A stretch of 64,000 bases of DNA from Hyaloraphidium curvatum SAG 235-1. Lineage: Eukaryota; Fungi; Monoblepharomycota. Location of the stretch: contig JAIVFI010000028.1 in NCBI GenBank assembly GCA_025558095.1, forward strand, positions 186,001 to 250,000, written 5' to 3'. The notes beneath the pieces are model-generated. The model had not been told where the DNA came from and made no database searches. It saw nothing but the letters and a program-made list of their open reading frames with translations. How positions within the stretch are numbered: the first letter of the stretch is position 1; each line of letters begins with the position of its first letter. A program made the position numbers and the translations under genes. Below, one piece after another: positions 25,401-48,434 of the stretch.

Positions 25401-27055
25401 GCTCGGCCTGTCGGACTGCGCGGATACTCTCGTCGGCGACGCAAACCTGAAGGGGATCAGCGGTGGCGAGATGCGCCGCGTTTGCATTGCTCTCGGTATC
25501 CTCGAGGAGGAGGTTGCAGTGCTTTGCCTCGACGAACCTTCGACTGGTCTGGACTCCAGCGCAGCGACAACGGTCATCACTGCTTTGCGGAGGATCGCCG
25601 ACACCGGAAGGACGGTGATCCTGACCTCGCAGCAGACCTCCCGCCCGGAAGCTTTCAACCAGTTCGACAACGTGCTGCTCCTGTCTCGTGGTGGAGAAGT
25701 GGCCTACGCCGGCCCGCGCGAACAGATGGTGCCGTTCTTCGAGAAGCTGGGCTACAAGATTCCCGAGTTTGTTCAGCCGGCGGACTACGTCATCGACCTC
25801 TCCAGCATCGACCTGCGCAACCACGCGGCCGAGACCGAATCCCGCGCCCGCGTAGCTGGAATCGTCGAGCAGTACAAGCTCACGGCCGCGGAGTCTTTCC
25901 GCGCCGAGGCGGAGAAGGCGCCGGCTGCTGGCGAAGCGCCGCACCAGGTGGAAAAAGCCGAGATCAAGAGCCGGACGCCCTTCTGGCAGGCCATCCCCGT
26001 GCTGTTTGCGCGGACGATGCGCAACTTCCGCCGCAAGCCTGCCGAGGCGATCGATTTCCTCGCGCTCCCCGGCGGCTTCGCCTTTGTCTCGCTCGTGTTC
26101 TACGAGAACAGCATCCGCGTGAGCAACTACTATTCCATTCAGGTGATTGCCGTCTCGTGCGGCCGCCCTCCAGCTCGCTCACCTGCATCTCTGCCAGAAC
26201 ACGCTCGGTCTCTTGTTCTCCATTCCCGGGCTCTTGTTCATGGGCTTGCTTCAGACGGCCGCCTACTATCCGCCTGACCGCGCGTTCTTCACGCGCGAGT
26301 TCCTGGACGGCATAACGAGCGTTGAGTGCGTTCGCATTCCGCCAATGGCGCCGCTTCCGTGCTTAATGGATTCGATCTCCGCAGGTCGTTCGTCGCCACG
26401 CAGGCCATTGTGCAGGTGCCTTTCACCATTATGGGAGCACTGATTTGGGTTCTGCGTGAGTCTCCGGTCTGCTTGCGACATCGCATGCCTTTCTCACACC
26501 CCTCCAAGTCGGCTGCACGGCTTTGGGCCTCCAAATCGGCTTCGGCGTCAACTTCTTGATCAACCTCTTGGTCACGACCTGCTTCCTCGTGGTCGGCACG
26601 AGCATCGGGCTCTCCATCCTCACCGTCGTCGACAACATCGGCCTCGGTCTGGTCGTTGCCAGCGCGCTGAACACGTGTGCCATCGTCATGTCGGGCGTGG
26701 GCGCGCAGAGCATCCCTGCGGTCCTATACTACATCAACGTGAGCTTGTGCGTGGTGTGCCGAGTCTTTCTCGTCGCTCATGCCGACGGCAGTACATCTCC
26801 CCGCTCCGATGGGGCATCGCCGTCCTCACCAACCTCGAGTTCACCGGACGGACCTTCTCCTGCACCTCGGCCCCGGACCAGTCGCTGCCGGACGGCACCT
26901 GCATCGTCTCTACGGGCGAGCAGGTCCTGCAGACTCTGAACCTGGAGTCGGTCAACATCGGCATGAACCTCGGCATCCTTGTGGCCATCACCGTCGCCTC
27001 GCGCTTCATCTACTACGGCCTGCTCAAATTCAAGATGTCGCGCATGATCTCGTAG
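22424..27055 (+). CDS. Full-length ABCG transporter (NBD-TMD)2, YOL075C-like, multi-exon
   Basis: NBD1: GASG|AGKTT, YVKQED, LLLLDEPTSSLD, SVHQP. NBD2: GSGGSGK|TS, ISGGEMRR, CLDEPSTGLD. Two TMDs with Cys-containing extracellular loops. Confidence 0.88.
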
Positions 27056-34827: not shown

Positions 34828-36054
34828 CTATGTCGCCACTGCAAGGGATGTCAGCGTGGATCCGCTCTCCGCGAGCGCAAGCCTCACCTGGCGGTATGTC
34901 CGCGACTTGACTCGCGTACTGCCGATCATAAGCGAGAGCGATGCGCAGGCGGAGGTGGGACCCACCTTGTCGAACATCCACCTGTACTTCCACTCGTCCT
35001 TCGGCAGCCCCGGGCAGGCGAAGTTTGCCCTGTAAGCCTCCACCTCCTCCCTCGCTTTCGGGTCATCGACCCCTTTGCGGGTCCCGTTGAACAGGGTAAA
35101 CATGTTCATCGCCCACGCGCCCGCGATGTGCCAGATAAAGTCCCCCGGCCGCCACGGGTCCCTGTCGCGCTGGCAGTCGATCTCGACCGGATAGGCGTTG
35201 AACCTCTTCTGCGGGACCACGTATGTCCGCGAGCGCAGCTCTGCGTCCTCCCTGAGCAGCCGCACAAACTCGCCCTGCTCGTTGTCCCTGGGCGTGCGGG
35301 CCAGCAGGGTCGCGAACACGCGGCCGAGCAGGCCGAACATGTAGGGCGACGAGCGGACGAGGAAGGAGCCCGTGTTGGCCGAGTTGCAGTCCTCGGCCAC
35401 CACGAAATCCGGCAGGTGGTCCGGCCGCCCCCTCGTGTCGGCCTGCGCGGCCGCGGCGCCGCCGCACCCGTTCCCGAGCCCCGGGATCAGATCGTCGATC
35501 CGCGCGGTCATGTTCGTAATGAGCGTGTCGAGGTCCAACCACCACACGTAGGCGGCCGAGGGATACAGCTCCAGCGCCTCGATCAGAGCGCCGACCTTGA
35601 CCCAGTACCCGATGTAGCGCCCGTCGTGGCTCTTGTCGGGACGGTTCCAGCGCTTCCGGGCCATCCCGAACGGCGTCCGCGTGGGGTCCGGCGGCATCGC
35701 GTCCAGGGATTCCACGCCGCAGTCCGGCTCCCGCGGGTACAGCGCGGCGTCGCCGACGTCCACGAGGTGCGACCACGAAAACACGGGATGGAAGGCCACG
35801 CGGGGCCGGTGCAAGAGCGCGTATCGCTGCTTGTTGGCCAGCGAGCGGATCGCGTACGGCGCGTCCTTTGTCGCCGCCGTGACGATCACCACGAGCGGGC
35901 CGGGCGGCGGCGCGTCGGGGAGCGCTCCGGCGCGTAAGGCGGGCGCGGGCGCGCTCGGCGGGGCCGGCGCGGGCGGCGCGGGGCTGCGAAGCACCAGCGC
36001 CGCCGCGAACGCGCACGCGGCGAGGACGGCGCCGACGAACCACCGGCGCCGCAT
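34828..36054 (-). CDS. Glycosyltransferase family 34 (GMA12/MNN10-like), type II membrane
   Basis: Anchor WFVGAVLAACAFAAALVL, NKQRYALLH, WVKVGAL, VWWLDLDTLITN (DxD), NTGSFLVR, NEQ, FNAY, WRPGDFIWHIAG. Confidence 0.87.
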   Translation of the reverse strand: MRRRWFVGAVLAACAFAAALVLRSPAPPAPAPPSAPAPALRAGALPDAPPPGPLVVIVTAATKDAPYAIRSLANKQRYALLHRPRVAFHPVFSWSHLVDVGDAALYPREPDCGVESLDAMPPDPTRTPFGMARKRWNRPDKSHDGRYIGYWVKVGALIEALELYPSAAYVWWLDLDTLITNMTARIDDLIPGLGNGCGGAAAAQADTRGRPDHLPDFVVAEDCNSANTGSFLVRSSPYMFGLLGRVFATLLARTPRDNEQGEFVRLLREDAELRSRTYVVPQKRFNAYPVEIDCQRDRDPWRPGDFIWHIAGAWAMNMFTLFNGTRKGVDDPKAREEVEAYRANFACPGLPKDEWKYRWMFDKVGPTSACASLSLMIGSTRVKSRTYRQVRLALAESGSTLTSLAVAT

Positions 36055-36286
36055 GTGGGATGACTCGACCAGGGACGCAGTGCAAATTGATCGACGCCGC
36101 CCGGACAAACACAGATGTCCCTGGGCGGATTCCCCTTCCGATGGCCCATTCGTTGAAATCGTTCCCTTTGAACGGTGTGATGTATCTTCTCTACCGCATC
36201 GCGTGAGGAATGGGAGCCAGCTTCGCCACCCGCCGAACCATTCTTCCTTCGTGCTACATCGATCGCCCACCGCATCCGCCCCAGCC

Positions 36287-38521
36287 CTATTGGTTCTCCC
36301 CCCTCACCCGCCGCTGGTACCTCCACGCCCTCTCCCTCCACACCCTCTCCTCGTGCGCCGTCACCGGCCCCGCCACCCCCTCCCTGCTCCTCACCGCCCT
36401 CGCCACATCCACCACGGGGTCCACGGGCGCCCGCATCCTCCCCGCGCGGTCGAAATCGAACCGCGGCGCCTCCGCGGCCGGCTTCCCGGACTTTTCGGCG
36501 CGCCGGAGCTCGGCGGCCCGCGCCTCGGCCTCGAGCCGCGCGATCGTCTCCGCCGCGCGGGTCGGCATCCTCGCCGGCCGCGAACTGGGCTCCTCCAGGC
36601 CCTCGTTTCCCCCCCTCCCCGCGACGGCGGACGCGCGGTCGTACCGCTTGCCGCCCTCGGGATCGGTCGACAGGCTCAGGCGCTCCTTCCCGAGCAGGGC
36701 CAGGAGGGAAGCCGGGTCCGACGCGGCGTCGGGGGTCCGGCGGAGGGCGCGGGAAAAGGCGGGGATGTCGCGGGGCATGAGCGACAGCACGGGCTCGTGG
36801 AGGCCTGCCGCGCGGTGGGGTCAGCGACGCGACGATGGCGGGGGAGCAGGGAGGGACCGACCGAGCTCCCGGAAGATGACGCTGGCCTGGGGGGACCACT
36901 CGACCTTCCAGTAGGCGATGCCGACGGGGGTGAGGTTGTGCGCGCGCATCATCCTCAGGAAGGGCAGCGCGGCGATCCTTCGCGGGGGGGAGGGGAGGGG
37001 TCAGCGCCGGCCCCCGCGGCGGCCCCGAAGGCGGCGCAGGACGTACCTCTCCCTGATCCGATGCTTCTGCTCCCCCTCCCCGTCGTGGTCCCGAACCCAA
37101 GGCGACCTCCCCTCCACCCCCTCCACCTCCCTGCCCTCGGGCAACCGGATGTCCACCTCCCCCTCCTGCTCGCACACGACCGCCACCACCCTGTGCCACA
37201 GGTTCGGGCTCTGCTTGGCGGGGTGGGGGGGGAGGTAGGGCACGGCGCAGTGCGCGGGGTCGGCGAGGTCCAGGGTGAGGATGGGGCGCGGGGGGAGGTT
37301 GGTGTGCAGGGAGAGGAGGAGGGATTCGTACGAGGCCGTGTCGAGGCGGGGGTAGTCTGCGAAGGGGGGGGGGGGGGGGGCAAAAGCGGGGGCGACACGA
37401 TGGAGGGGAGGGTGAGAAGGGCGCGGGGGGAACGGGAGGCGCGCCGGGAGCCCACCGAGGTCCATGACGGCGACGGTCAGCAGCTTCTCCCTGCCCCGCG
37501 GCGCCGACCCGTCCGGGAAGCTCTCGATCTTGATCTTCGGGGGCGTGCGCCTGCACTCGGTGCCGTCGCCCTTGTACCTGCTGACCGGCGACATGTGCAG
37601 CGGGACGAGCGGCACGTCGGTCCGCCTGCTGAACCGCTCCGTGGCGATCCCCCGCTCCTTCTCGAACAGGGCCGTGACGGCGACCGACGGCTCGAACGCG
37701 TCGTGCAGCCCGAACAGGTCGACGAGCACCGCGTCCCGCGTCATGTGGTCCAGCAGGATGGGCAGCGTGATCTTCTGGAACACGTCCCTCTTGAGCGGCA
37801 GCAGCGCCTCGTCCTCGGGGTGCGTCCCGAACTCGCGCGCGTTGCGCGCGGGGAGCAGCTCCCTCAGCTGCGGGTCGGCGAATGCCAGCTCGTCGGCGCG
37901 GTTGCGCCTGCGCGCGGCCAGCAGCGCGCGGTCCGGGTCGGCGAGGTCCGGGTCTGCCAGGCGCGCGTCGAGCGAGGCCAGCTCGGCGCGGACCTTGGCG
38001 ACCTCTGCGTCGATCACGGCGAGGGCGAGGCGGTACGCGGCGTCTGCGGCGGATGGGGGCGGTGGTGCGGGCGCGGAGGGCGGCCCGGGTCGCGGGGCAT
38101 CGCGGGGCCCCGGTGCCTCGGAGGCCTCGCTTGCGGCGGCCGGCTGCTGTGCGGGTTCGGTGGAGTCGCCCTCGGTGGCGTGCGCCCGCCCGACGGGCCC
38201 CTCCGCCGCGATGGCGTCCGCCTTCCCCTCGGGCGCCGCGCCCTCCCGCGCGCCCTCCGCCGCCGGCACACCCGCATCCGCCGCGGCGCCCGCGGCCCCC
38301 GCCGCCCCCGCGCTTCCCTCCCCGCCCCCCGCGGCGTCCGGCCCGCCCGCGGCGAACCCGCGCGCGAACCGCGGCGCGGGGCGCGGGACCGCTCCCGCCC
38401 GCGGCGCCGCGCCCGCCCGCGGGGGGCCCGCACGCCGCGGCACCGCCGCGTGCGCGAGCAACGATAGTCGCCGGCCCGCCGCCGCGCGGAGCAGCGCGAG
38501 CGCGTCCGTGGGGGGCGCCAT
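36287..38521 (-). CDS. MRPL35: Mitochondrial ribosomal protein mL38 (PEBP-like domain), spliced
   Basis: Arg/Ala-rich presequence, TLPILLDHMT..V.VD, LLTVAVMDL|DYP, YLPPHPAK..HRVVAVVCEQ, GIAYWKVEW. Confidence 0.65.
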
Positions 38522-38751
38522 CCGGACGCGGTTTTGTTGTCGACACGACGTCTGATCGCGGGCACATCCACCCAGCTCGCGACCGCTCGAACCCGAGACG
38601 GGAACGGATCCGGCATGGACGATGGACCATCGTTGCAGATCGGGACGTCGCCTTTGCCGCGGATGGGCCCCATGCTCCCTCGGGTCACCTCCTCGATCGC
38701 CCCCGCCCGATCTCGCCCCCTCCGCACCCGATCGTGGTCGCGGCACGCCGC

Positions 38752-41118
38752 CTAGTACACGCACGGCTCCACCTCGAGCCGCACCGCAAACTCCCTCTCC
38801 ACCGCCGCCGCCACCTCGACCCCCAGCAGCCACACGTCCGCGCCCGTCGCCCCGCCCCCGTTCAGCAGCCACAGCCCGTGCTTGTCCGACACCCTCGCCC
38901 CGCCCCTCCGGCGTCCTTTGAGCCCGCACCGCTCGATCATCCACCCCGCGTGCACCAGGGTCCCCTCGGAGGCGCCGATCTCGAGACGGGAGCAATCTGG
39001 GGCGCGGGCAAGCAGCGCTCGCAGCGCATCCCCACGCATCACCGGGTTCTTAAAGAAGCTCCCCGAGCTGCACCTGCCCTCCGGATCGGGGAACGACGCG
39101 CGGCGCACCTCTTCGACCCAACGTGCCACCTGCGCAGGGGTAGGCCGATCGCACGGGTCCCGCGCCGCTCGCGCCGCAAGGGCGGGGTACGAAAGCCGGG
39201 CTACCCATGCCCAGTCGGCCCGTGGCAGCGCGAATCGCACGCTGATGATCAGATATCGCCCCTTCTCGCTCTTGAATGCCGAGTCCCTGTGCCCAAATGC
39301 GCACCGTTCGGCGTCCCAGGTCTCGAGCTTCCCCAGATGAAGGTCCACCGCATCCAGGGAGCGGAAATGGTCCGACACGGACGCGCCGTACGCACCGACG
39401 TTCTGCACCGGCGCACCGCCGGCCGTGCCGGGGATCAGCGCGAGGTTCTCGAGCCCCCCAAGGTCCTGTCCGATCGTCCACCGGACAAAGGCGTCCCACG
39501 GCTCCCCAGCACCGGCCTCCACGACCGCCTTGCCGTCTTCCGTCCCGCCAACCACCCTCCGCCCCGAGATCTCGACCCGAAGTACGGCACCTGGGAAATG
39601 ACCCCTGGGGAACAGCACGTTGCTCCCCCCGCCCAGCACCATCAGCGGCATCCGTCCCGCCAGCGCGCGGCCGGTGCGCAGGGCGTCGTCCGCGGTGCGG
39701 ATGGGGACCAGCAGGGCACAGGTGGCGGGGAGGTGCAGGGTGGTGAGCTCCGAGAGGTCGGCGTCGGCGATCGTGCCTTCCGGCAGCCCGTTCAGCACGG
39801 CATCAGGGAGAGTGCCGCACGCCGTGGCCCCGCGCAGCCGCACGACGTCCGCGCCCAGGCCCCGCAACTTGCCCTCCAGGTCCTCGTAGCCCCTGTCCAC
39901 CACGCCGGCCCTCGCGACCACCGTCGTCCCCGGCGCCGCCAGCGCCGCGATCAGCAGCGCCGCCGCGCCCCTCAGGTCCTTCCCCCTCACATGGGTCGCA
40001 CCCATCAGCACCTGCGTCCCCCGCACGTGCATATCTCCCCCTTTTGAGGAGATTTCGGCGCCCATGCGGGCGAGCTCGCCGGCGTGCGAGGTGCGCCGGG
40101 GGTACACCGCGTCTGACACGGTGCACTCGCGGCCGGGGGGGAGGAGGCAGCACAGGGCGGTGTAGGGCTGCTGCAGGTCAGTCAAGAAGGCGGGGTGGTC
40201 CCCCGCCGCAATGCTGGGCGGGGTTGGACGGACCGCGGGGGAGGTGGGTGACCGGATTCGGATGCCGTCGGGGAGGGAGTCGACGGTACATCCGGCGGCG
40301 CGGAGGGCATCGACGAGGGATTCCAGATGCTGGAGCTCGGCGCCTTGCACCAGCACGTCGCCGCCACATGCGGCCGCGGCGATCATGAAGGTGCCCGCCT
40401 CGGTGCGGTCGGGCATGACCGAGTGGGAGGCGCCGGCGAGGGTCTCGGCTCCGCGGATGCGGATGGTCCGCGTGCCGGCGCCCGAAATGGAGGCGCCCAT
40501 CTTTGTCAGGAGGGATGCGACGTCGGCCACCTCGGGGTCCAGCGCCGCGTTGTCGATAACACTCTCGCCAGGGGCCAGCGCGGCCAGCATCAGCGCGTTC
40601 ATGGTCCCCGTCACCGTCGGCCTGCGGAATTCGATGCGTGCGGCACTGATCGGCCCGCGGGCCTCGATCTCCCCGTCCTCGCCAGTGGCAACGACGGCGC
40701 CCATCTGCCGCAGCACGCCGACGTGCATGTCGAGCGGGCGCGGCCCGATGGCGCACCCCCCCGGCGGCGCGGGCAGGTGCGAGCGTCCGAGCCGTGCGGT
40801 GAGGCCGAGCAGCAGCACGGCGGCGCGGGACGCGGTGCACAGCGCCGGCGGCGGAGGCGGGGCAAGCCCCCGCGGGCACGGCCCCACGGCCACCGTCCCG
40901 TCCGGCAGCCGCCCGGCGGGGCACCCGATCGCCCGCAGCAGCCGCATCGCGCAGTCGACGTCGGCGATGCGCGGCACGTTGGCCAGCCGCGTCCTCGCGG
41001 AGCCCAGCGCCGCGGCGAACAGGCAGCCCAGCGCGGCGTTCTTGGAGCCCGCCACGGCCACCGCGCCGAGCAGCGGGCGGCCGCCGCGGACGACGAACGC
41101 GCCGCCGTCGTCGTCCAT
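38752..41118 (-). CDS. murA-murB: MurA-MurB fusion (UDP-GlcNAc enolpyruvyl transferase + UDP-N-acetylenolpyruvylglucosamine reductase), copy 1, 788 aa
   Basis: MurA: GSKNAAL, PGGCAIGPRPLDMH, PDRTEAGTF, FLTDLQ, DLRGAAAL, DRGYE. MurB: GGGSNVL, GLENLALIPGTAGGAPVQNVGAYG, FGHRDSAFK, GSFFKNP, LEVEP. Single intronless ORF. Confidence 0.95.
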   Translation of the reverse strand: MDDDGGAFVVRGGRPLLGAVAVAGSKNAALGCLFAAALGSARTRLANVPRIADVDCAMRLLRAIGCPAGRLPDGTVAVGPCPRGLAPPPPPALCTASRAAVLLLGLTARLGRSHLPAPPGGCAIGPRPLDMHVGVLRQMGAVVATGEDGEIEARGPISAARIEFRRPTVTGTMNALMLAALAPGESVIDNAALDPEVADVASLLTKMGASISGAGTRTIRIRGAETLAGASHSVMPDRTEAGTFMIAAAACGGDVLVQGAELQHLESLVDALRAAGCTVDSLPDGIRIRSPTSPAVRPTPPSIAAGDHPAFLTDLQQPYTALCCLLPPGRECTVSDAVYPRRTSHAGELARMGAEISSKGGDMHVRGTQVLMGATHVRGKDLRGAAALLIAALAAPGTTVVARAGVVDRGYEDLEGKLRGLGADVVRLRGATACGTLPDAVLNGLPEGTIADADLSELTTLHLPATCALLVPIRTADDALRTGRALAGRMPLMVLGGGSNVLFPRGHFPGAVLRVEISGRRVVGGTEDGKAVVEAGAGEPWDAFVRWTIGQDLGGLENLALIPGTAGGAPVQNVGAYGASVSDHFRSLDAVDLHLGKLETWDAERCAFGHRDSAFKSEKGRYLIISVRFALPRADWAWVARLSYPALAARAARDPCDRPTPAQVARWVEEVRRASFPDPEGRCSSGSFFKNPVMRGDALRALLARAPDCSRLEIGASEGTLVHAGWMIERCGLKGRRRGGARVSDKHGLWLLNGGGATGADVWLLGVEVAAAVEREFAVRLEVEPCVY

Positions 41119-41189: not shown

Positions 41190-41981
41190 ATGGGCACCGT
41201 CCGCCGGCTGGCGCAGTCTTGCTCCACGGCCGCCGCGCTGCTGCTGCTGCTGCTCCTTCCCCGGGCCCGGCGGCCCGACGCCGGCCGGCCGCCGCGGCAC
41301 CCTCGCGGCGCCCCGCTCATCGCCAACGCGACCACCGCGATCGTCGTTTCCTACCGGTACGGCCACCTCGCGGCTCACGCCCTCGAGACGGCGCTGGCCC
41401 AGACCCGCCCCTTCGATTTCATCTGGTTCGCCGACGATGCCGCCGGCGACTGCGCGCACCTCCCCGCGCTCTACCCCGAGGTCTCGTTCTTCCTCCGGCG
41501 GGAACGCCTCGGCACGGTGGCCAACTTCCAGGACCTCCTGGACCGCGTGTCCACCGAGCGCTTCGCCTTCTTCGGCGCCGACAACTGGCTCCGCGAGGAC
41601 CTGCACGAACGCCTGGCGTCGCACGCCGCGGACGCGGTCAAGTACGACCTCGCGGTCGTCGGCGACCCCCGCGGCGAGTCGTACGCCGTCCGGCACCACG
41701 GCGGCCCGGCCCGCAGGCAGATGCGCCGCGAACCGGGCTGGTGGCACTGGGACATGTCGTCGCTGCACAGCGGGTCGATGCTCCTCCGGACCGCCGCCGT
41801 GCGCGCCGCGGGGGGGTACGCGGGGACCAGCCGCAGGGCCGGGATGGGGGCCGAAGCGCGGAGGACGGAGGAGGACAGGGACCTATACGCGGCGATGCTG
41901 GCGCGCAACGCCAGCGTGGTGCACGTGCCCGAGGCGCTGCTGTACTACCGCCGGCACAGGGCAAACCACAACCCGCCATGA
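41190..41981 (+). CDS. GT2-family (GT-A) glycosyltransferase with N-terminal signal/anchor, paralog 1 (263 aa)
   Basis: AAALLLLLLL anchor, SYRYGHL..ALETALAQT.PFDFIWFADD, LGTVANF, FFGADNWL, EEDRDL, HVPEALLYYRRH. Confidence 0.85.
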   Translation: MGTVRRLAQSCSTAAALLLLLLLPRARRPDAGRPPRHPRGAPLIANATTAIVVSYRYGHLAAHALETALAQTRPFDFIWFADDAAGDCAHLPALYPEVSFFLRRERLGTVANFQDLLDRVSTERFAFFGADNWLREDLHERLASHAADAVKYDLAVVGDPRGESYAVRHHGGPARRQMRREPGWWHWDMSSLHSGSMLLRTAAVRAAGGYAGTSRRAGMGAEARRTEEDRDLYAAMLARNASVVHVPEALLYYRRHRANHNPP

Positions 41982-42560
41982 GAGGGAGGTGGGCCTCGCG
42001 GGCGTGGCCGGATCGGTTTCGCTGGGTCTCGATTCCTATTAGGCACTTCGCACGGTGGCGACTCAAGTTGTGTCGACCCCCCCGCACGTGGGACGACGGT
42101 CGGCCGGCCTCGCCGCCGCGGCTGGATGCCATCAAGTAGAAGGGCGAGGTCCACGCTCGTACCGTACCGCAGTCGTCGAAGCCACCACGCGCCAGCCTTG
42201 ACGCCGCCGCTGCAGAACCGAAAATGGATTCCCATGATCACGAATCCCGGCCGGGCTTTCTTGAGCACCGCTGGATGCCCGCAGCCGCGATTGCCGGGCA
42301 CGTCACGCGACGAACGTGCCGTTTTCGACCGGAAAGGGCAGCTGCAGAGGTGGTCTTAACCCCGGAAGCGGCCCTTTCGGAAACCACACGTGCCACGCTG
42401 CCGCTATCGGAACCGTCCCAGCGTCCGACCACCGGGAAGAATCTTGATCGGCCGTCGATGTACCGGACATTAATCGACGCAGGGTGCGGGCGATGCCCCG
42501 TTTTTCGGGACGCGTAAACAACCCGCCACCAATCGGGTCTTGGTGCGGACAAACGCCGAC

Positions 42561-43397
42561 ATGGGCATCGACCGCCGGCTCGCGCCGCCAATCGCGGTAG
42601 CCGCGTGCCTGCTGACGGCCTGGGGTCCGTGGCATGCCGCTGCCCCCGCTCCGCCGGCCGCCCCCGGCGCGGCGGGCATTCCGGGCGCCGCATCGCCAGA
42701 GTGGCCGCCCCGCCACCCGCCGGGCGAGCCGCTCATCCCGAACGCCACGACGGCGATCTTTGCCTCGTTCAAATACGGCCACCTGGCGGCCCACGCCCTC
42801 GAGACGGCGCTCGCGCAGACCCGCCCCTTTGATTTCATATGGTTCGCCGACGACGCCGCGGGCGACTGCGCGCACCTCCCAGCGCTGTACCCCGAGGTCA
42901 CCTTCATCTTGCGCCCCGTGCGCCTCGGCACGGTTGCCAACTTCCAGGACCTGCTGGACCGCGTGGCCACGGAGCGGTACCTCTTCTTTGGCGCCGACAA
43001 CTGGCTACGCGAGGACCTACACGAGAAGCTGGCATCCGCCGACGCCGACGTCGTCAAGTACGACCGGACCGTCGTCGGCGACCCGCACGGGGAATCGGGG
43101 CTGGTGCGGCACCACGGCGGCCCCACCCGCAGGCAGATGCGCCGCAGCCCCGACGGGTGGCGCTGGGACATGGCCTCGCTGCACAGCGGGTCGATGCTCC
43201 TCCGGACCGCTGCCGTGCGTGCCGCGGCGGGTTACGCGGGGACCAGCAGCAGGGCGGGGATGGGCGCCGGGGCGCGGAGGGCCAACGAGGACGCGGACCT
43301 GTACGCGGCGCTGAGGGCGCGCAACGCGAGCGTGGTGCACGTGCCGGAGGCGCTGCTGTACTACAGGCGGCACAGGGCGAATTTCAATCCGTCGTGA
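42561..43397 (+). CDS. GT2-family glycosyltransferase with N-terminal signal/anchor, paralog 2 (278 aa)
   Basis: IAVAACLLTAW anchor, Pro/Ala stem, same GT2 motifs (NEDADL). Confidence 0.85.
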   Translation: MGIDRRLAPPIAVAACLLTAWGPWHAAAPAPPAAPGAAGIPGAASPEWPPRHPPGEPLIPNATTAIFASFKYGHLAAHALETALAQTRPFDFIWFADDAAGDCAHLPALYPEVTFILRPVRLGTVANFQDLLDRVATERYLFFGADNWLREDLHEKLASADADVVKYDRTVVGDPHGESGLVRHHGGPTRRQMRRSPDGWRWDMASLHSGSMLLRTAAVRAAAGYAGTSSRAGMGAGARRANEDADLYAALRARNASVVHVPEALLYYRRHRANFNPS

Positions 43398-43820
43398 GGC
43401 GGTGCCGGATGCGCGGGATCGGCTGTACAGTATCTCGTCGTTGGATATAACATGGGATCGGCCGCCGCCGCCCCAAACCCAGAGGGATATCGCAGCCCGC
43501 CGCGCCGGGCCTCCCCGCCCATCCCTCTCCAAGCCTGCCCGTCTTCCCCGCTGGCGGTTCCGACAGCGCCTCCGCGTCCCCGAGCGCGGAGCCCAGCCCC
43601 TTCGTGGCCGGCGGGCCGGGGGTGCACGGCGCCGGCCTTGCGACGGGGCACGGGCCGGCGACCCGGCCACGCACGGGGCCGGGTGGTGGCACTGCTCTGA
43701 CGAAGCTGTAACAGAAGCGTCGTTCGGGCGATGATGGATTCGGAGTGCGCCCAACGAGCGGTCCCAAATGATCGGGTCGCTGCTTTCCCATGCTGAGGCG
43801 CCGCGCCGATCGCCCCGCCC

Positions 43821-44699
43821 TCACGACGGATTGAAGTTGGTCCTGTGCCGGCGGTAGTAGATCAGCGGCTCGGGCACGTGCACCACGGTCGCGTTGCGCC
43901 GGCGCAGCGCCTCGTACAGGTCTTGGTCCTCCGCGGTCTTCTGCACCGCGACGCCCGCCCCGGCCACGCGGGACGTTCCCTTGTACCCGCCCGCGGCGCG
44001 CACAGCCGCCGTACGGAGTAACATCGACCCGCTGTGCAGGAAGGTCATGTTCCAGTACCAGCCGTCCGCCGCGCGGGTGAGCTCCGGGCCGGCGTGGAAC
44101 TTCACCACCTCCGACGTCCCGTGGGGGTCCCCGACAATCGACCGGTCGTACTTGACCACGTCGGCGTCGGCGGATGCCAGCTTCTCGTGGAGGTCCTCGC
44201 GCAGCCAGTTGTCGGCACCGAGGAACAGGTAGCGCTCGGTCGCGACGCGGTCCAGCAGGTCCTGGAAGTTGGCCACCGTGCCGAGGCGTTCCCGCCGGAG
44301 GATGAAGGTGACCTCGGGGTAGAGCGCTGGGAGGTGCGCGCAGTCGCCCGCGGCGTCGTCGGCAAACCAGATGAAATCGAAGGGGCGGGTCTGCGAGAGA
44401 GCGGTTTCGAGGGCGTGCGCCGCCAGGTGGCCATATTTGAACGAGGCAAAGATCGCCGTCGTTGCGTTGGGGAGCAGCGGAGCGCCCGGCGGGTGCCGCG
44501 GCGGCCAGGCGGGGGGGTCGCTGTGCGCCGCGGTAGCCGGGGTTGCTGTGTCGCGTGGGGGCGCATCGTGGAGGCTAGCGGGTGGCGGCGTCGTTGTTGC
44601 CGCGGCGTTCCAGTGCATCGGGGCCGCCACGAGCAGCAACAGCGCGGCGGCGGCGGCAGCGGCAATGGGCAAGGCCCACCGGCGGGCCCCGGCGCCCAT
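43821..44699 (-). CDS. GT2-family glycosyltransferase with N-terminal signal/anchor, paralog 3 (292 aa)
   Basis: ALPIAAAAAAALLLLVAA anchor, Thr/Pro stem, same GT2 motifs (AEDQDL). Confidence 0.85.
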   Translation of the reverse strand: MGAGARRWALPIAAAAAAALLLLVAAPMHWNAAATTTPPPASLHDAPPRDTATPATAAHSDPPAWPPRHPPGAPLLPNATTAIFASFKYGHLAAHALETALSQTRPFDFIWFADDAAGDCAHLPALYPEVTFILRRERLGTVANFQDLLDRVATERYLFLGADNWLREDLHEKLASADADVVKYDRSIVGDPHGTSEVVKFHAGPELTRAADGWYWNMTFLHSGSMLLRTAAVRAAGGYKGTSRVAGAGVAVQKTAEDQDLYEALRRRNATVVHVPEPLIYYRRHRTNFNPS

Positions 44700-44895
44700 C
44701 CCGGTTGCTGCTGAAGTAGAGGGCTTCCGGCACGGAGCAACAACGTCGATTATCGTCACCGCAGCCCCCGCCCGGGTATCCGTTTCGAGCGATGCAAACG
44801 AGAAAGGGACGGATGAAACAAGGGATGCCGGCGGCTTGCGGCCATCCGGCCACTCAATCGAGGGACGAAGAGCAACAAAACAAGGCACGCCCGGG

Positions 44896-47280
44896 ATGGA
44901 GGACGACGGCGGCGCGTTTGCCGTACGCGGCGGCCGTCCGCTTTTCGGCACCGTCGCCGTGTCGGGCTCGAAAAACGCCGCGCTGGGTTGCCTCTTTGCC
45001 GCGTCCCTCGGGCGCGGCGAAACGCTCCTGGCCAACGTGCCGCGCATCGCCGACGTCGACGCGGCGATGGAGCTGCTGCGGGCCATCGGATGCCCCGCCG
45101 ACCGGTTGGCGGACGGCACGGTGGCGGCGGGGCCCATGGCCGGCCCCGGTCCGCGGGATCACCAAGCGGCGGCGGCCCCCCCAGCGGCCCTCTGCGCGCG
45201 ATTCCGGTACTCGATATTGCTGCTCGGCCTGACAACGCGCTTGGGACTCTCCTGCCTGCCCGCGCCGCCCGGGGGGTGCGCCATCGGGCCGCGCCCGCTC
45301 GACATGCACGTCGGCGTGCTGCGGGAGATGGGCGCAGTCGTTGCCATTGGCGAGGACGGGGAGATTGAGGCCCGCGGGCCGATCAGTCCCGCACGCATCG
45401 AATTCCGCAGGCCGACGGTGACGGGGACCATGAACGCGCTGATGCTGGCGGCTCTGGCCCCTGGCGAGAGTGTTATCGACAACGCGGCCGTCGACCCCGA
45501 GGTGGCCGACGTCGCATCCCTCCTGACAAAGATGGGCGCCTCCATTTCGGGCGCCGGCACGCGGACCATCCGCATCCGCGGAGCCGAGACCCTCGCCGGC
45601 GCCTCCCACTCGGTCATGCCCGACCGCACCGAGGCGGGCACCTTCATGATCGCCGCGGCCGCATGTGGCGGCGACGTGCTAGTGCAAGGCGCCGAGCTCC
45701 AGCATCTGGAATCCCTCGTCGATGCCCTCCGCGCCGCCGGATGCACCGTCGACCCCCTCCCCGACGGCATCCGAATCCGGTCACCCACCTCCCCCGCGGT
45801 CCGCCCAACCCCGCCCAGCATTGCGGCGGGGGACCACCCCGCCTTCTTGACTGACCTGCAGCAGCCCTACACCGCCCTTTGCTGCCTCCTCCCTCCCGGA
45901 AGCGCGTGCACAGTCTCAGACGGCGTGTACCCCCGGCGCACCGCGCACGCCGGCGAGCTCGCGCGGATGGGCGCCGACATCTCCTCAAAAGGGGGCACCA
46001 TGCACGTGCGCGGGACCAAGGCGCTGTTGGGCGCCACCCACGTGAGGGGGAGGGACCTGAGGGGCGCGGCGGCGCTGCTGATCGCCGCAATGGCGGCGCC
46101 GGGGACAACGGTGGTCGCGGGGGCGAGCGTGGCGGACAGGGGCTACGAGAATTTGGAGGGCAAGCTGCGCGGGCTGGGCGCGGACGTCGTTCGGCTGCGC
46201 GGGGCCACGGCGTTCGGCACTCTCCCTGATGCCGTCCTGCGCGGTCTTCCGGGCGGCACGATCGCCGACGCCGACCTCTCGGAGCTCACCACCCTGCACC
46301 TCCCCGCCACCTGCGCCCTGCTGGTCCCCATCCGCACCGCGGACGACGCCCTGCGCACCGGCCGCGCGCTGGCGGGACGGATGCCGCTGATGGTGCTGGG
46401 CGGGGGGAGCAACGTGCTGTTCCCCAGGGGTCATTTCCCAGGTGCCGTACTTCGGGTCGAGATCTCGAGGCGGAGGGTGGTTGGCGGGACGGAAGACGGC
46501 AAGGTGGTCGTGGAGGCCGGTGCTGGGGAGCCGTGGGACGCCTTTGTCCGGTGGACGATCGGACAGGGCCTTGGGGGGCTCGAGAACCTCGCGCTGATCC
46601 CCGGCACGGCCGGCGGTGCGCCGGTGCAGAACGTCGGTGCGTACGGCGCGTCCGTGTCGGACCATTTCCGCTCCCTGGATGCGGTGGACCTTCATCTGGG
46701 GAAGCTCGAGACCTGGGACGCCGAACGGTGCGCATTTGGGCACAGGGACTCGGCATTCAAGAGCGAGAAGGGGCGATATCTGATCATCAGCGTGCGATTC
46801 GCGCTGCCACGGGCCGACTGGGCATGGGTAGCCCGGCTTTCGTACCCCGCCCTTGCGGCGCGAGCGGCGCGGGACCCGTGCGATCGGCCTACCCCTGCGC
46901 AGGTGGCACGTTGGGTCGAAGAGGTGCGCCGCGCGTCGTTCCCCGATCCGGAGGGCAGGTGCAGCTCGGGGAGCTTCTTTAAGAACCCGGTGATGCGTGG
47001 GGATGCGCTGCGAGCGCTGCTTGCCCGCGCCCCAGATTGCTCCCGTCTCGAGATCGGCGCCTCCGAGGGGACCCTGGTGCACGCGGGGTGGATGATCGAG
47101 CGGTGCGGGCTCAAAGGACGCCGGAGGGGCGGGGCGAGGGTGTCGGACAAGCACGGGCTGTGGCTGCTGAACGGGGGCGGGGCGACGGGCGCGGACGTGT
47201 GGCTGCTGGGGGTCGAGGTGGCGGCGGCGGTGGAGAGGGAGTTTGGGGTGCGCCTCGAGGTCGAGCCGTGCGTGTACTAA
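44896..47280 (+). CDS. murA-murB: MurA-MurB fusion, copy 2, 794 aa
   Basis: Same catalytic motifs as copy 1. ATG at 44896 (MEDDGGAFAVRGGRPL) aligns with the copy 1 start. Confidence 0.95.
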   Translation: MEDDGGAFAVRGGRPLFGTVAVSGSKNAALGCLFAASLGRGETLLANVPRIADVDAAMELLRAIGCPADRLADGTVAAGPMAGPGPRDHQAAAAPPAALCARFRYSILLLGLTTRLGLSCLPAPPGGCAIGPRPLDMHVGVLREMGAVVAIGEDGEIEARGPISPARIEFRRPTVTGTMNALMLAALAPGESVIDNAAVDPEVADVASLLTKMGASISGAGTRTIRIRGAETLAGASHSVMPDRTEAGTFMIAAAACGGDVLVQGAELQHLESLVDALRAAGCTVDPLPDGIRIRSPTSPAVRPTPPSIAAGDHPAFLTDLQQPYTALCCLLPPGSACTVSDGVYPRRTAHAGELARMGADISSKGGTMHVRGTKALLGATHVRGRDLRGAAALLIAAMAAPGTTVVAGASVADRGYENLEGKLRGLGADVVRLRGATAFGTLPDAVLRGLPGGTIADADLSELTTLHLPATCALLVPIRTADDALRTGRALAGRMPLMVLGGGSNVLFPRGHFPGAVLRVEISRRRVVGGTEDGKVVVEAGAGEPWDAFVRWTIGQGLGGLENLALIPGTAGGAPVQNVGAYGASVSDHFRSLDAVDLHLGKLETWDAERCAFGHRDSAFKSEKGRYLIISVRFALPRADWAWVARLSYPALAARAARDPCDRPTPAQVARWVEEVRRASFPDPEGRCSSGSFFKNPVMRGDALRALLARAPDCSRLEIGASEGTLVHAGWMIERCGLKGRRRGGARVSDKHGLWLLNGGGATGADVWLLGVEVAAAVEREFGVRLEVEPCVY

Positions 47281-47556
47281 GCGGGGCAGGGTCGGGGAGG
47301 AGAGAGGGGCAGTGAGGCGTCGCGCAAAACGAGGCCGAACGCCGGCCGGGAACGCTCACCACTCCCCTCGTTTTCTTCATCGCCGGCGCCCCGTCCTCCG
47401 CGCCCCCAACCGCGACAGTGCCGGCGCCTTGACTGAAGCGACCAATCTTCCTTTTGTGTCCCGGAGCCGAAGAGCGACGAACGCCACGTCACGCACGCTG
47501 CCGCAAGGGAGGACCACAAAGTCGGCATCGTCGTCAACCAGCCCGAAGAGAAGCGC

Positions 47557-48434
47557 ATGGACTTCCACCGCGAATTCTGTCTCAGCCGGGGCTCGGTGGC
47601 GCGGGCCGTCAGCCGGGGTACGCTGGAGCCTGACCTCCCCGAGGTCGCCGAATGGAAAGCCCAGGCGGTGGACTCGCGCTCATGGAAGTGCGGATACTGC
47701 GGGGCTCAATCCGTGGGAAAAATCGAGATGGCACTCGCCGCCCCGGGTATCCCCAGCAGCCCGATGCCGGTGCTGATCGTGTTCTGCTACCCAGCTTGCG
47801 CCCGTGCGGGGTGCGCGGCGCAAGCGGCCTTAACTCCGATCCCCGGTCGATGCCCCTGCTGATGAGCGGCGTGCGAGCTCTGCTGGCAGAATCGGTCGAT
47901 GAGTTCGTTGCCATCTTCCTGTGGAGGGGCTCGGAAATCGCCGAAACGCAGTACCACCTCATCCGAACCGGGAACGCCGCGCCCCTGCCCCAGATGCTGG
48001 CTGTGATCAAAGCCATTTGCGGCAGAGTTCCCGATGCGCGGAAGGACCGCGCCGGGCGGGTCCTGCAGGACTGGCACTGCGTCGGCTGCGGCTCCGTCAG
48101 CTGCGCCTTCTTCCTCGCCGCCGACGCCGCCTCGCCGCCTCGCCGGGTCTCCTCCACCACCACGGTGAAATGGGACGGCCACGTTTTCCCCCACTGCGAC
48201 GCATCTTCGTGCCGCAAGCTCGCCTTGGCCAAGGCAACGGAACGGTCCAAAGGCGACCCCAACGCGCTGATCGATGGTGGCTTTTGTGCAGCGTGCCCGG
48301 CGATTTCCACGGACCGGGGCCGCGGGATGCAGCGCTGCGGGAGGTGCAGGGTGATGAGATACTGCTCAGCGGAATGCCACCGGAGGGACTGGCCGAAGCA
48401 CAAGGCGAAGTGTGCGCCGAGGGGAGGCCAGTGA
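47557..48434 (+). pseudogene. MYND zinc-finger protein with one apparent frameshift near 47830
   Basis: WKCGYCG in one frame, and DWHCVGCG, FPHCDASSC, CAAC..MQRCGRCRVMRYCSAECHRRDWPKHKAKC in another. Confidence 0.65.

What the first reader, a model, noticed from the sequence alone, without database searches (positions are those of the whole stretch)
44896..47280. MurA-MurB single polypeptide retains the catalytic residues of both enzymes, including the fosfomycin-target Cys
By recalled alignment to E. coli, MurA K22/N23 (GSKNAAL), R91, C115/R120 (PGGCAIGPRP), D305 (FLTDLQ), R331, D369/R371 (DLRG) and R397 (DRGYE) are present. MurB (type I, E. coli-like) keeps the FAD loop GGGSN, R159 (HRDS), S229 (GSFFKNP) and E325 (LEVEP). 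A short linker (LRGATAFGTLPDAVLRGLPGGTI) joins the domains. The MurA fold starts at about residue 7, so no transit peptide is evident. Some substrate-side segments deviate (RPTVTGT for KVSVGAT; VYPRR for VFENR), which could indicate a shifted sugar specificity.
Basis: partly seen in the sequence, partly recalled or inferred. Interest (0 to 1): 0.8.

Follow-up and report, generated by a model that had tools for sequence, protein, structure and literature searches.

The report
Fungal MurA-MurB fusion enzyme, no peptidoglycan
A freshwater fungus carries two intact copies of a gene that joins the first two bacterial cell-wall sugar enzymes (MurA and MurB) into one protein, although it has none of the other peptidoglycan genes, so it may make the 'bacterial' sugar muramic acid for a purpose of its own.

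Summary
Window 44896-47280 (+) is an intact, intronless 794-aa ORF. It reads MurA (residues 8-434), a linker of about 20 residues, then type I MurB (458-793). All cited catalytic residues are present. A 93%-identical inverted copy lies at 38752-41118 (-). Each copy is head-to-head with a secretory-type GT2 glycosyltransferase.

The host is a eukaryote, apparently the fungus Hyaloraphidium curvatum. Neighbouring genes and codon usage are eukaryotic. The genome has no Mur ligase, PBP transglycosylase or SEDS gene.

An exhaustive HMMER scan of 1.84 billion representative proteins found no other protein with both domains. The two copies are under purifying selection (dN/dS 0.31).

Both halves sit on long branches, so no donor can be resolved. 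MurB has lost K217, K262 and Y254, which were invariant or near-invariant in my 128-sequence sample and hold the nucleotide part of NADPH/substrate in P. aeruginosa MurB. The 'RPTVTGT' deviation is the commonest bacterial state.

Best reading: a horizontally acquired bifunctional UDP-MurNAc (or close analogue) synthase feeding a non-peptidoglycan glycan. Expression and activity are untested. The scan had already noted this same stretch (s1-719121), not other DNA.

The parts
44896..47280 (+). murAB copy A: 794-aa MurA-linker-MurB ORF (stop included)
   Evidence: no internal stops, no gaps suggesting introns
44917..46197 (+). MurA domain of copy A (residues 8-434)
   Evidence: NF006873 385 bits, above its cut-off of 297. 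AF2 model pLDDT 88.6, TM 0.91 and rmsd 1.6 to 3kqj. Catalytic residues kept.
46198..46266 (+). inter-domain linker (about residues 435-457)
   Evidence: gap between the NCBIfam envelopes; alignments A1 and A2
46267..47274 (+). type I MurB domain of copy A (residues 458-793)
   Evidence: NF000755 297.6 bits, above its cut-off of 277. AF2 model pLDDT 88.6, TM 0.85 to P. aeruginosa MurB 4jay. R159/S229/E325 kept; K217S, K262T, Y254L.
38752..41118 (-). murAB copy B: 788-aa paralogue, 93% identical
   Evidence: equals P0001 in the protein collections
41190..41981 (+). GT2 #1, head-to-head with murAB-B across 71 bp
   Evidence: Pfam GT2; N-terminal hydrophobic segment
42561..43397 (+). GT2 #2
   Evidence: Pfam GT2; alignment A6
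43821..44699 (-). GT2 #3, head-to-head with murAB-A across 196 bp
   Evidence: Pfam GT2; homologue search; N-terminal membrane segment plus Pro/Thr-rich stem
38748..40859 (.). left arm of the inverted repeat (pairs with 45173-47284, 95% complementary)
45173..47284 (.). right arm of the inverted repeat
   Evidence: the MurB part is nearly identical between copies (pS 0.023), which fits gene conversion

Best explanation
murAB is a nuclear, intronless gene of bacterial origin in a monoblepharid fungus (apparently Hyaloraphidium curvatum). It encodes one cytosolic polypeptide that carries out two consecutive reactions. The MurA half transfers enolpyruvate from PEP to the 3-OH of UDP-GlcNAc, using the Cys115-loop mechanism. 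The FAD-containing MurB half reduces the enol ether to the lactyl ether, giving UDP-MurNAc or a very close analogue.

The genome has no Mur ligases, no PBP-type transglycosylase and no SEDS polymerase. The nucleotide sugar is therefore an end product, not a peptidoglycan intermediate.

Shown here: the domain architecture, the retained catalytic residues, the two copies under purifying selection, the eukaryotic genomic setting, the absence of the rest of the pathway, and the absence of any comparable fusion in very large protein collections.

Inferred: that the enzyme is active; that its product is UDP-MurNAc; and, least certain, that the three adjacent secretory-type GT2 transferases use that product to place a lactyl-GlcNAc residue on a wall or secreted glycan. 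The GT2 genes share tiny divergent intergenic regions with murAB.

The loss of the two lysines and the stacking tyrosine at the mouth of the MurB channel suggests that nucleotide or cofactor handling has been remodelled. Relaxed NADPH-over-NADH discrimination, or direct hand-over of substrate from the fused MurA, are possibilities.
For: Architecture and fold.

Catalytic and substrate residues: in MurA, K22, N23, R91, C115, R120, D305, R331, D369, R371 and R397 are all kept. In MurB, Y125, R159, Y190, R214, S229, N233 and E325 are kept.

Selection: dN/dS between the copies is 0.31, with pS 0.129 against pN 0.042 (Fisher p 5e-13). This also holds in the unhomogenised first 150 codons, p 3e-6.

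Eukaryotic setting:
- The locus lies on a 607-kb contig.
- Neighbours include a GT34, an ABCG-type transporter and a zf-MYND protein.
- GC3 is 0.84-0.88, like the neighbouring genes.
- A protein that NCBI names as H. curvatum is encoded 100% identically on contig C39.

No peptidoglycan pathway: PF08245, PF00912 and PF01098 are absent from the 31.9-Mb genome, while the same searches hit 10-12 of 14 control genomes. The only other PF00275 hit is the AROM protein.

Uniqueness: phmmer over 1.84e9 representatives lists no other protein with both domains. The best non-self hit is a 421-aa MurA at 286 bits, and the listed hits of 584 aa or more lack MurB domains. The word search agrees. A published survey of Mur chimeras lists none (PMC10214165).

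GT2 link: each murAB is head-to-head with a GT2, across 71 bp and 196 bp. The fungal GT2s carry an added N-terminal membrane segment and stem that their roughly 200-aa bacterial and phage homologues lack. A bacterial homologue sits in a Wzm/Wzt polysaccharide locus.

Precedent: lactyl-GlcNAc occurs in non-peptidoglycan bacterial glycans, E. coli O69 and O150 (PMC7685785).
Against: - No enzymatic data exist, and transcription is not clearly shown. The only run that holds the locus is of uncertain type ('RNA?'), and its contigs cannot decide.
- Both halves are strongly diverged. They keep only 78% of the columns that are at least 90% conserved in bacteria (bacterial medians 97% and 99%), and their stem branches are 2.06 and 1.61 substitutions per site.
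- The MurA half falls below the TIGR01072 equivalog cut-off, 361 against 392.7 bits.
- MurB has lost K217, K262, E128 and Y158 (128/128 in the sample) and Y254 (115/128). K217 and K262 bind the diphosphate and the 2'-phosphate of NADPH in P. aeruginosa MurB (PMC3689657). That loss could impair the canonical reaction.
- Nothing links the GT2s to MurNAc beyond adjacency. Their phage and bacterial homologues are not next to murA or murB in the five contexts examined.
- A luminal GT2 would also need a UDP-MurNAc transporter, and none was identified.
Confidence: 0.6

Rival explanations
1. Neofunctionalised enzyme pair. The enolpyruvyl-transfer and flavin-reduction chemistry is kept, but on a different acceptor, or with a different hydride donor (NADH or another). 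The product would then not be UDP-MurNAc.
For: - Both halves sit on long stems, and only 78% of conserved columns are kept.
- MurB has K217S, K262T, Y254L, Y158H and E128S at positions that hold the nucleotide or the 2'-phosphate.
- MurA has N330R, F332T, H394V and G319S/R, and it fails the TIGR01072 cut-off.
- NikO shows that this fold can use another nucleotide acceptor; it appears among the PDB hits.
Against: - All MurA positions that contact UDP-GlcNAc or PEP are conserved or within bacterial variation.
- The MurA half scores far higher against MurA than against NikO (1e-77 against 3e-21).
- The MurB half passes the NF000755 and TIGR00179 equivalog cut-offs.
Confidence: 0.2
2. Non-functional or unexpressed relic of a horizontal transfer. 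The long open frames would then be a by-product of 70% G+C DNA.
For: - Spurious ORFs of 300-900 aa abound in this window.
- Transcription has not been proved.
- Several otherwise invariant residues are lost.
Against: - dN/dS is 0.31, with highly significant depletion of non-synonymous changes.
- Every catalytic residue is kept in both copies.
- Both domains give confident AF2 models.
- Codon position GC pattern is typical of the host's coding genes.
Confidence: 0.1
3. A host-encoded supply of UDP-MurNAc for a bacterial endosymbiont or partner, as proposed for host-encoded peptidoglycan genes in some insects and protists (my own knowledge, not checked here).
For: The MurB half is most similar to Betaproteobacteria (45-51%), a class that includes endosymbionts of early-diverging fungi (own knowledge).
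Against: - No bacterial Mur ligase, PBP or SEDS gene is anywhere in the assembly.
- There is no targeting sequence on murAB.
- The partners at the locus are secretory GT2s, not peptidoglycan genes.
Confidence: 0.05
4. Bacterial contamination or a mis-assembly in the fungal genome.
For: Both domains and the GT2s are of bacterial type, and the genes have no introns.
Against: - The locus is embedded in a 607-kb contig between GT34, ABCG and zf-MYND genes.
- GC3 matches the neighbouring genes.
- No bacterium is closer than 46% (MurA) or 51% (MurB).
- The fusion is unknown in bacteria.
- A contig from a public run bridges the 3' end of murAB-A into the flank, 46569-47691.
Confidence: 0.02

Closest known systems
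Bacterial MurA (UDP-GlcNAc 1-carboxyvinyltransferase; e.g. E. coli 1uae, E. cloacae 3kqj, H. influenzae 2rl1)
   Same: Full-length two-domain inside-out alpha/beta barrel fold (TM 0.89-0.91). Cys115 loop PGGCxIGxRP. K22, N23, R91, R120, D305, R331, D369, R371 and R397 are all present.
   Different: At most 46% identity to any of billions of sequences, and a long branch. Unusual residues at N330, F332, H394, G319 and in segment 82-99. Scores below the TIGR01072 equivalog cut-off. Fused to MurB. Encoded by a fungus.
Type I MurB (P. aeruginosa 4jay, E. coli 2mbr)
   Same: FAD_binding_4 plus MurB_C domains, GGGSN loop, Y125, R159, Y190, S229, N233 and E325. The segment aligning to the E. coli Tyr190 region is present, with Y190 kept. 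Passes NF000755 and TIGR00179. TM 0.85 to 4jay.
   Different: K217S, K262T, Y254L, Y158H and E128S. These positions are invariant or nearly so in 128 type I MurBs. Three of them hold the diphosphate, the 2'-phosphate and the base of NADPH/substrate in P. aeruginosa MurB.
Natural Mur chimeras (MurE-MurF, MurC-Ddl, MurB/C of Verrucomicrobium spinosum, MurG-MurC, MurD-FtsW)
   Same: Two enzymes of UDP-MurNAc-peptide synthesis are made as one polypeptide joined by a short linker. As in MurE-MurF, the two steps are consecutive (PMC10214165, PMC4803751).
   Different: The MurA-MurB combination is not among the chimera types surveyed and was not found in 1.84e9 representative proteins. The host is a eukaryote without the rest of the pathway.
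Nuclear Mur genes of plants and algae with plastid peptidoglycan (e.g. Physcomitrium, Picea; PMC12681378)
   Same: Eukaryotic nuclear genes for MurA and MurB activities.
   Different: In plants they are separate genes within a fundamental set of Mur genes serving plastid peptidoglycan (PMC12681378 abstract), with plastid targeting (own knowledge). Here there is no targeting peptide, no plastid, no Mur ligases, and the two enzymes are fused.
Lactyl-ether sugars in bacterial surface polysaccharides (e.g. lactyl-GlcNAc in E. coli O69 and O150)
   Same: A lactyl-substituted GlcNAc used outside peptidoglycan (PMC7685785). A bacterial homologue of the neighbouring GT2 lies in a Wzm/Wzt polysaccharide locus.
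   Different: No such glycan is known from a fungus. No bacterial or phage locus with this GT2 next to murA or murB was found.

Membership tests
MurA (UDP-GlcNAc 1-carboxyvinyltransferase) | EPSP-synthase/MurA fold over the full length | tested here: met
   PF00275 2e-62 over profile positions 1-417. AF2 model TM 0.91 and rmsd 1.6 to 3kqj.
MurA (UDP-GlcNAc 1-carboxyvinyltransferase) | Catalytic loop Cys115 and the PEP/UNAG residues K22, N23, R91, R120, D305, R331, D369, R371, R397 | tested here: met
   All identical in both copies and in 81/81 bacterial MurAs.
MurA (UDP-GlcNAc 1-carboxyvinyltransferase) | Score above curated family cut-offs | tested here: inconclusive
   NF006873 (subfamily) 385 bits against a cut-off of 297: passes. 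TIGR01072 (equivalog) 360.8 against 392.7: fails.
MurA (UDP-GlcNAc 1-carboxyvinyltransferase) | PEP-dependent enolpyruvyl transfer to UDP-GlcNAc; fosfomycin sensitivity | not testable with these tools
   Needs an enzyme assay.
MurB type I (UDP-N-acetylenolpyruvoylglucosamine reductase) | FAD_binding_4 plus MurB_C domains with the GxGSN FAD loop | tested here: met
   AF2 model TM 0.85 to 4jay.
MurB type I (UDP-N-acetylenolpyruvoylglucosamine reductase) | Catalytic R159, S229, E325 | tested here: met
   Kept in both copies.
MurB type I (UDP-N-acetylenolpyruvoylglucosamine reductase) | Tyr190 loop and extra beta-alpha-beta-beta element of type I enzymes | tested here: met
   Y190 is kept and the alignment to E. 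coli and P. aeruginosa MurB is continuous. The best hits are type I structures, and NF000755 scores 297.6 against a cut-off of 277.
MurB type I (UDP-N-acetylenolpyruvoylglucosamine reductase) | Nucleotide-holding residues K217, K262, Y254 (P. aeruginosa K227, K272, Y264) | tested here: not met
   S, T and L in both copies. K, K and Y occur in 128, 128 and 115 of 128 type I MurBs. Their roles come from PMC3689657.
MurB type I (UDP-N-acetylenolpyruvoylglucosamine reductase) | NADPH-dependent reduction of EP-UDP-GlcNAc | not testable with these tools
   Needs an enzyme assay.
Peptidoglycan biosynthesis pathway | Mur ligases MurC-F (Mur_ligase_M) | tested here: not met
   PF08245: no match in 31.9 Mb; 12 of 14 control genomes hit.
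Peptidoglycan biosynthesis pathway | Glycan polymerases (PBP transglycosylase, SEDS) | tested here: not met
   PF00912 and PF01098: no match.
Natural Mur chimeras | Two Mur enzymes in one uninterrupted reading frame | tested here: met
   794-aa and 788-aa ORFs without internal stops.
Natural Mur chimeras | Belongs to one of the described chimera types | tested here: not met
   MurA-MurB is not among the types listed in PMC10214165, and no second example was found.

The most novel reading that the evidence does not exclude
A fungus makes UDP-N-acetylmuramic acid in its cytosol with a unique MurA-MurB fusion. Golgi-type GT2 transferases of phage or bacterial ancestry then build muramic acid (3-O-lactyl-GlcNAc) into its own wall or secreted glycans. 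This would be the first muramic-acid glycoconjugate of a eukaryote made outside any peptidoglycan pathway.
Probability: 0.3. Interest if true: 0.85.

Novelty: new variant of a known kind. Interest (0 to 1): 0.66.

Why it matters
Muramic acid is treated as a strictly bacterial (and plastid) marker. It is used, for example, to estimate bacterial necromass in soils, and it is sensed as bacterial by innate immunity. A fungus that makes UDP-MurNAc without peptidoglycan would break that rule and point to an unknown class of eukaryotic glycans.

The MurA-MurB architecture has no counterpart in billions of sequences. It joins two consecutive steps, so it offers a natural test of substrate channelling between them. 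It also offers a natural experiment on how MurB works without the lysines that hold NADPH.

The locus is also a clear case of bacterial-type genes assembled into a new eukaryotic gene cluster.

Tried and rejected
1. Full-length alignment for structure prediction. Alignment A4 (fusion plus single-domain homologues) misplaced the MurB sequences onto the MurA half. I dropped it and folded the domains separately, so the inter-domain geometry was not modelled.

2. Donor identification.
- MurA tree of 81 GTDB genomes: the fungal pair joins other long branches, a likely artefact.
- MurB tree: the pair sits in an unresolved polytomy inside proteobacterial type I MurB.
- Only 'proteobacterial-like, best hits Betaproteobacteria' can be said for MurB. 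Nothing can be said for MurA.

3. Viral donor. IMG/VR MurA and MurB hits are at most 44% and 42% identical, no closer than bacteria, and none carries both domains.

4. Pre-assembled bacterial cassette.
- None of 80 bacterial murA loci has murB within 3 kb.
- Five GT2-homologue contexts (phage-like contigs and a Kaistella polysaccharide locus) lack murA and murB.

5. Co-transfer of GT2 with a PhyH gene. A PhyH-family ORF lies beside the GT2 paralogue on contig C15, but it shows no significant BLASTP similarity to the phage PhyH.

6. Expression. The single run that holds the locus is of uncertain type, and its contigs cannot show transcription.

7. Literature. No paper on a fungal or any other MurA-MurB fusion turned up in the library.

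8. The 969-aa reading of the ORF is rejected as a G+C-rich run-on that overlaps GT2 #3.
Full report
**What is there.** The ORF list shows a 969-aa open frame at 44371-47280 (+). Pfam places EPSP_synthase, FAD_binding_4 and MurB_C on it in that order. A sequence search of the PDB matches residues 8-437 of the 794-aa form to MurA (6.5e-77, H. influenzae 2rl1). It matches residues 470-794 to MurB (2.4e-65, P. aeruginosa 4jay; E. coli 2e-50).

A whole-genome search found a second copy inside the window at 38752-41118 (-). It is 93% identical, 788 aa, and has no internal stops. Both copies begin M-[E/D]-D-D-G-G-A-F. Similarity between them stops at that ATG. Copy B has only 16 open codons upstream and no earlier ATG. 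The upstream 175 codons of the copy A frame overlap a GT2 gene on the other strand.

**Catalytic residues.** I took E. coli murA and murB from NC_000913.3 and aligned them. I then repeated the comparison against 81 MurAs from GTDB genomes and 128 type I MurBs.
- MurA: K22, N23, R91, C115, R120, H125, D305, R331, D369, L370, R371 and R397 are all identical in both fungal copies.
- MurA nucleotide side: the positions I recall as UDP-GlcNAc contacts (D123, S162, V163, G164, V327, F328) are conserved or fall within normal bacterial variation.
- MurB: the GGGSN loop and Y125, R159, Y190, R214, S229, N233 and E325 are kept.

NCBIfam envelopes (8-434 and 458-793) leave a linker of about 20 residues. 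AF2 models of the separate domains are confident (mean pLDDT 88.6 each). They superpose on solved MurA (TM 0.91, rmsd 1.6, 3kqj) and on P. aeruginosa MurB (TM 0.85, 4jay).

- Overall divergence. The fungal copies keep only 78% of the columns that are at least 90% conserved in bacteria. The bacterial medians are 97% (MurA) and 99% (MurB).
- MurB losses. K217 is S, K262 is T, Y158 is H and E128 is S; all four are invariant in the 128-sequence sample. Y254 (115/128) is L.
- What those residues do. In the P. aeruginosa MurB-NADP+ structure, K227 (= K217) holds the diphosphate. K272 (= K262), together with Y196, binds the adenosine 2'-phosphate and is proposed to discriminate against NADH. Y264 (= Y254) stacks on the adenine. 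Substrate and NADPH share this channel (PMC3689657).
- Reading. The chemistry end of the MurB site is intact, while the nucleotide-holding mouth has been remodelled.
- Caveat. The 128 MurBs are mostly Betaproteobacteria, so 'invariant' refers to that sample plus E. coli, Thiolinea and P. aeruginosa.
- MurA oddities. The unusual residues are N330R, F332T, H394V, G319S/R, P303L and a cluster at 82-99. The MurA half passes the NF006873 subfamily cut-off but falls short of the TIGR01072 equivalog cut-off, 361 against 392.7 bits.

**Genomic setting.**
- Position. The window is G000:C28:186001-250000 of a 31.9-Mb, 55-contig assembly.
- Neighbours. They include a GT34 (GMA12/MNN10) transferase, ABCG-type transporter pieces, a zf-MYND protein and a Y-family polymerase.
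- Codon usage. Third-position G+C of murAB (0.84-0.88) matches the neighbouring genes.
- Organism. A GT2 paralogue that NCBI names as a Hyaloraphidium curvatum protein is encoded 100% identically on contig C39. The organism is therefore very probably that monoblepharid fungus. Earlier scan notes call the genome a freshwater fungus.
- Assembly. Contamination or mis-assembly is unlikely. A contig of a public run also bridges the 3' end of copy A into its flank.

**The cassette.** Between the two inverted murAB genes lie three paralogous GT2 genes: 41190-41981 (+), 42561-43397 (+) and 43821-44699 (-). The outer two are head-to-head with a murAB copy, across 71 bp and 196 bp.
- The nearest non-fungal relatives of the GT2s (45-52% identity) are GT2s of about 200 aa. 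These lie on phage-like contigs beside terminase genes, and in a bacterial Wzm/Wzt polysaccharide locus.
- The fungal proteins have gained about 80 N-terminal residues: a short basic stretch, a hydrophobic segment and a Pro/Thr-rich stem. This is the layout of a type II Golgi transferase.
- Their 'GADNW' motif is invariant in the bacterial and phage homologues too, so it is a family trait and not a fungal defect.

**No peptidoglycan pathway.** Six-frame searches of the whole genome found no Mur_ligase_M, no PBP transglycosylase and no SEDS protein, although the same searches hit 10-12 of 14 control genomes. The only other EPSP-synthase-fold gene is the AROM protein on contig C11. The nucleotide sugar made by murAB therefore cannot be going into a UDP-MurNAc-peptide.

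**Is it functional?**
- Between the copies, pS is 0.129 and pN is 0.042, giving dN/dS 0.31 (Fisher p 5e-13).
- In the first 150 codons, which have escaped homogenisation (pS 0.35), the depletion of non-synonymous change is still significant (p 3e-6).
- The MurB half is almost identical between the copies (pS 0.023), which fits gene conversion across the inverted arms.
- Long ORFs alone mean little in 70% G+C DNA. The selection signal and the retention of every catalytic residue argue for a working enzyme.
- Transcription could not be settled. The one public run that holds the locus is of uncertain type, and its contigs cover parts of the genes without deciding the matter.

**Uniqueness and origin.**
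- A phmmer scan of 1.84 billion representative proteins returned only the paralogue as a two-domain hit. The next best hit is a 421-aa MurA at 286 bits. The 150th listed hit still scores 233 bits, so most fusions carrying both domains would have ranked above it.
- The listed proteins of 584 aa or more carry other N-terminal extensions or duplicated MurA parts, not MurB. The word-index search agrees.
- IMG/VR holds no closer relative and no fusion.
- A published survey of Mur chimeras lists MurE-MurF, MurC-Ddl, MurC-MurB, MurG-MurC, MurD-FtsW and MraY-MurG, but not MurA-MurB (PMC10214165).
- The MurB half is 45-51% identical to Betaproteobacteria (Burkholderia, Azoarcus, Piscinibacter, Leptothrix). 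It falls inside proteobacterial type I MurB without resolution.
- The MurA half is at most 46% identical to anything. Its placement on a 2.06-substitutions-per-site stem is a long-branch artefact.
- None of 80 bacterial murA loci has murB within 3 kb. The fusion was probably made after transfer, but this is inference.

**Mechanism proposed.** A cytosolic bifunctional enzyme converts UDP-GlcNAc and PEP to enolpyruvyl-UDP-GlcNAc, then reduces it through FAD to UDP-MurNAc. Fusion would keep the two activities in 1:1 stoichiometry and might pass the intermediate directly, which could explain why the MurB channel mouth tolerates loss of its lysines.

Solved structures of MurA with bound UDP-MurNAc and a PEP-Cys adduct (3swd, 3su9 and 8d84, listed) are a reminder that the product binds MurA. 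The feedback interpretation of those complexes is my own knowledge. A consumer of UDP-MurNAc is therefore expected, and the co-oriented GT2s are the obvious candidates. Lactyl-GlcNAc in E. coli O69 and O150 antigens shows that such residues are used outside peptidoglycan (PMC7685785).

Steps shown: the architecture, the residues, the selection signal, the genomic context and the absence of the rest of the pathway. Steps inferred: enzyme activity, product identity, the GT2 coupling, and any transport of the product into the secretory pathway.

**Verdict.** I rate it a new variant of a known kind: a domain fusion without precedent, in a eukaryote that lacks peptidoglycan. It was not found on other DNA.

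Noticed in passing
window 41190-44699; G000:C39:463440-464228; G000:C15:58495-59283: The GT2 family has five copies in the genome: three in the cassette and two more on contigs C39 and C15. Its closest non-fungal relatives are GT2s of about 200 aa on phage-like contigs. There they sit in a small cassette (epimerase, methyltransferase, polysaccharide deacetylase, PhyH, GT2) beside the terminase genes.
   Followed up: partly
L127:8269-9261 (G000:C15:59268-60260): A PhyH-family ORF lies beside, and partly overlaps, the GT2 paralogue on C15. This echoes the PhyH-GT2 adjacency in the phage cassettes, but BLASTP shows no significant similarity to the phage PhyH.
   Followed up: partly
window 34831-36303 (-): A GT34 (GMA12/MNN10-type) Golgi glycosyltransferase with an N-terminal membrane segment lies 2.4 kb from the cassette, so the region is rich in secretory glycosyltransferases.
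   Followed up: partly
window 38748-40859 and 45173-47284: Divergence between the inverted murAB copies is very uneven. The first 150 codons have pS 0.35, while the MurB half has pS 0.023. The repeat arms end 4 nt beyond the stop codons. This fits an old duplication with ongoing gene conversion of the 3' part.
   Followed up: yes
window 44371-44895: The 175-codon upstream extension of the murAB-A frame is a G+C-rich run-on that overlaps GT2 #3 on the opposite strand. Many other long spurious ORFs occur in this 70% G+C region.
   Followed up: yes
window 22830-26274 (+): Two adjacent ORFs carry ABC_tran plus ABC-2 membrane domains (ABCG-type half transporters). They could be one interrupted gene or a tandem pair.
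   Followed up: no
window 47652-48434 (+): An ORF ending in a zf-MYND finger lies immediately downstream of murAB-A. Earlier notes describe the zone to its right as pseudogene-rich.
   Followed up: no
window 42173-42561: The public run of uncertain type has a high-depth contig over the stretch between GT2 #1 and GT2 #2. It has none over the murAB-A/GT2 #3 intergenic region or the 5' ends of those genes. If the run is RNA, this hints at long UTRs or an unannotated transcript.
   Followed up: no
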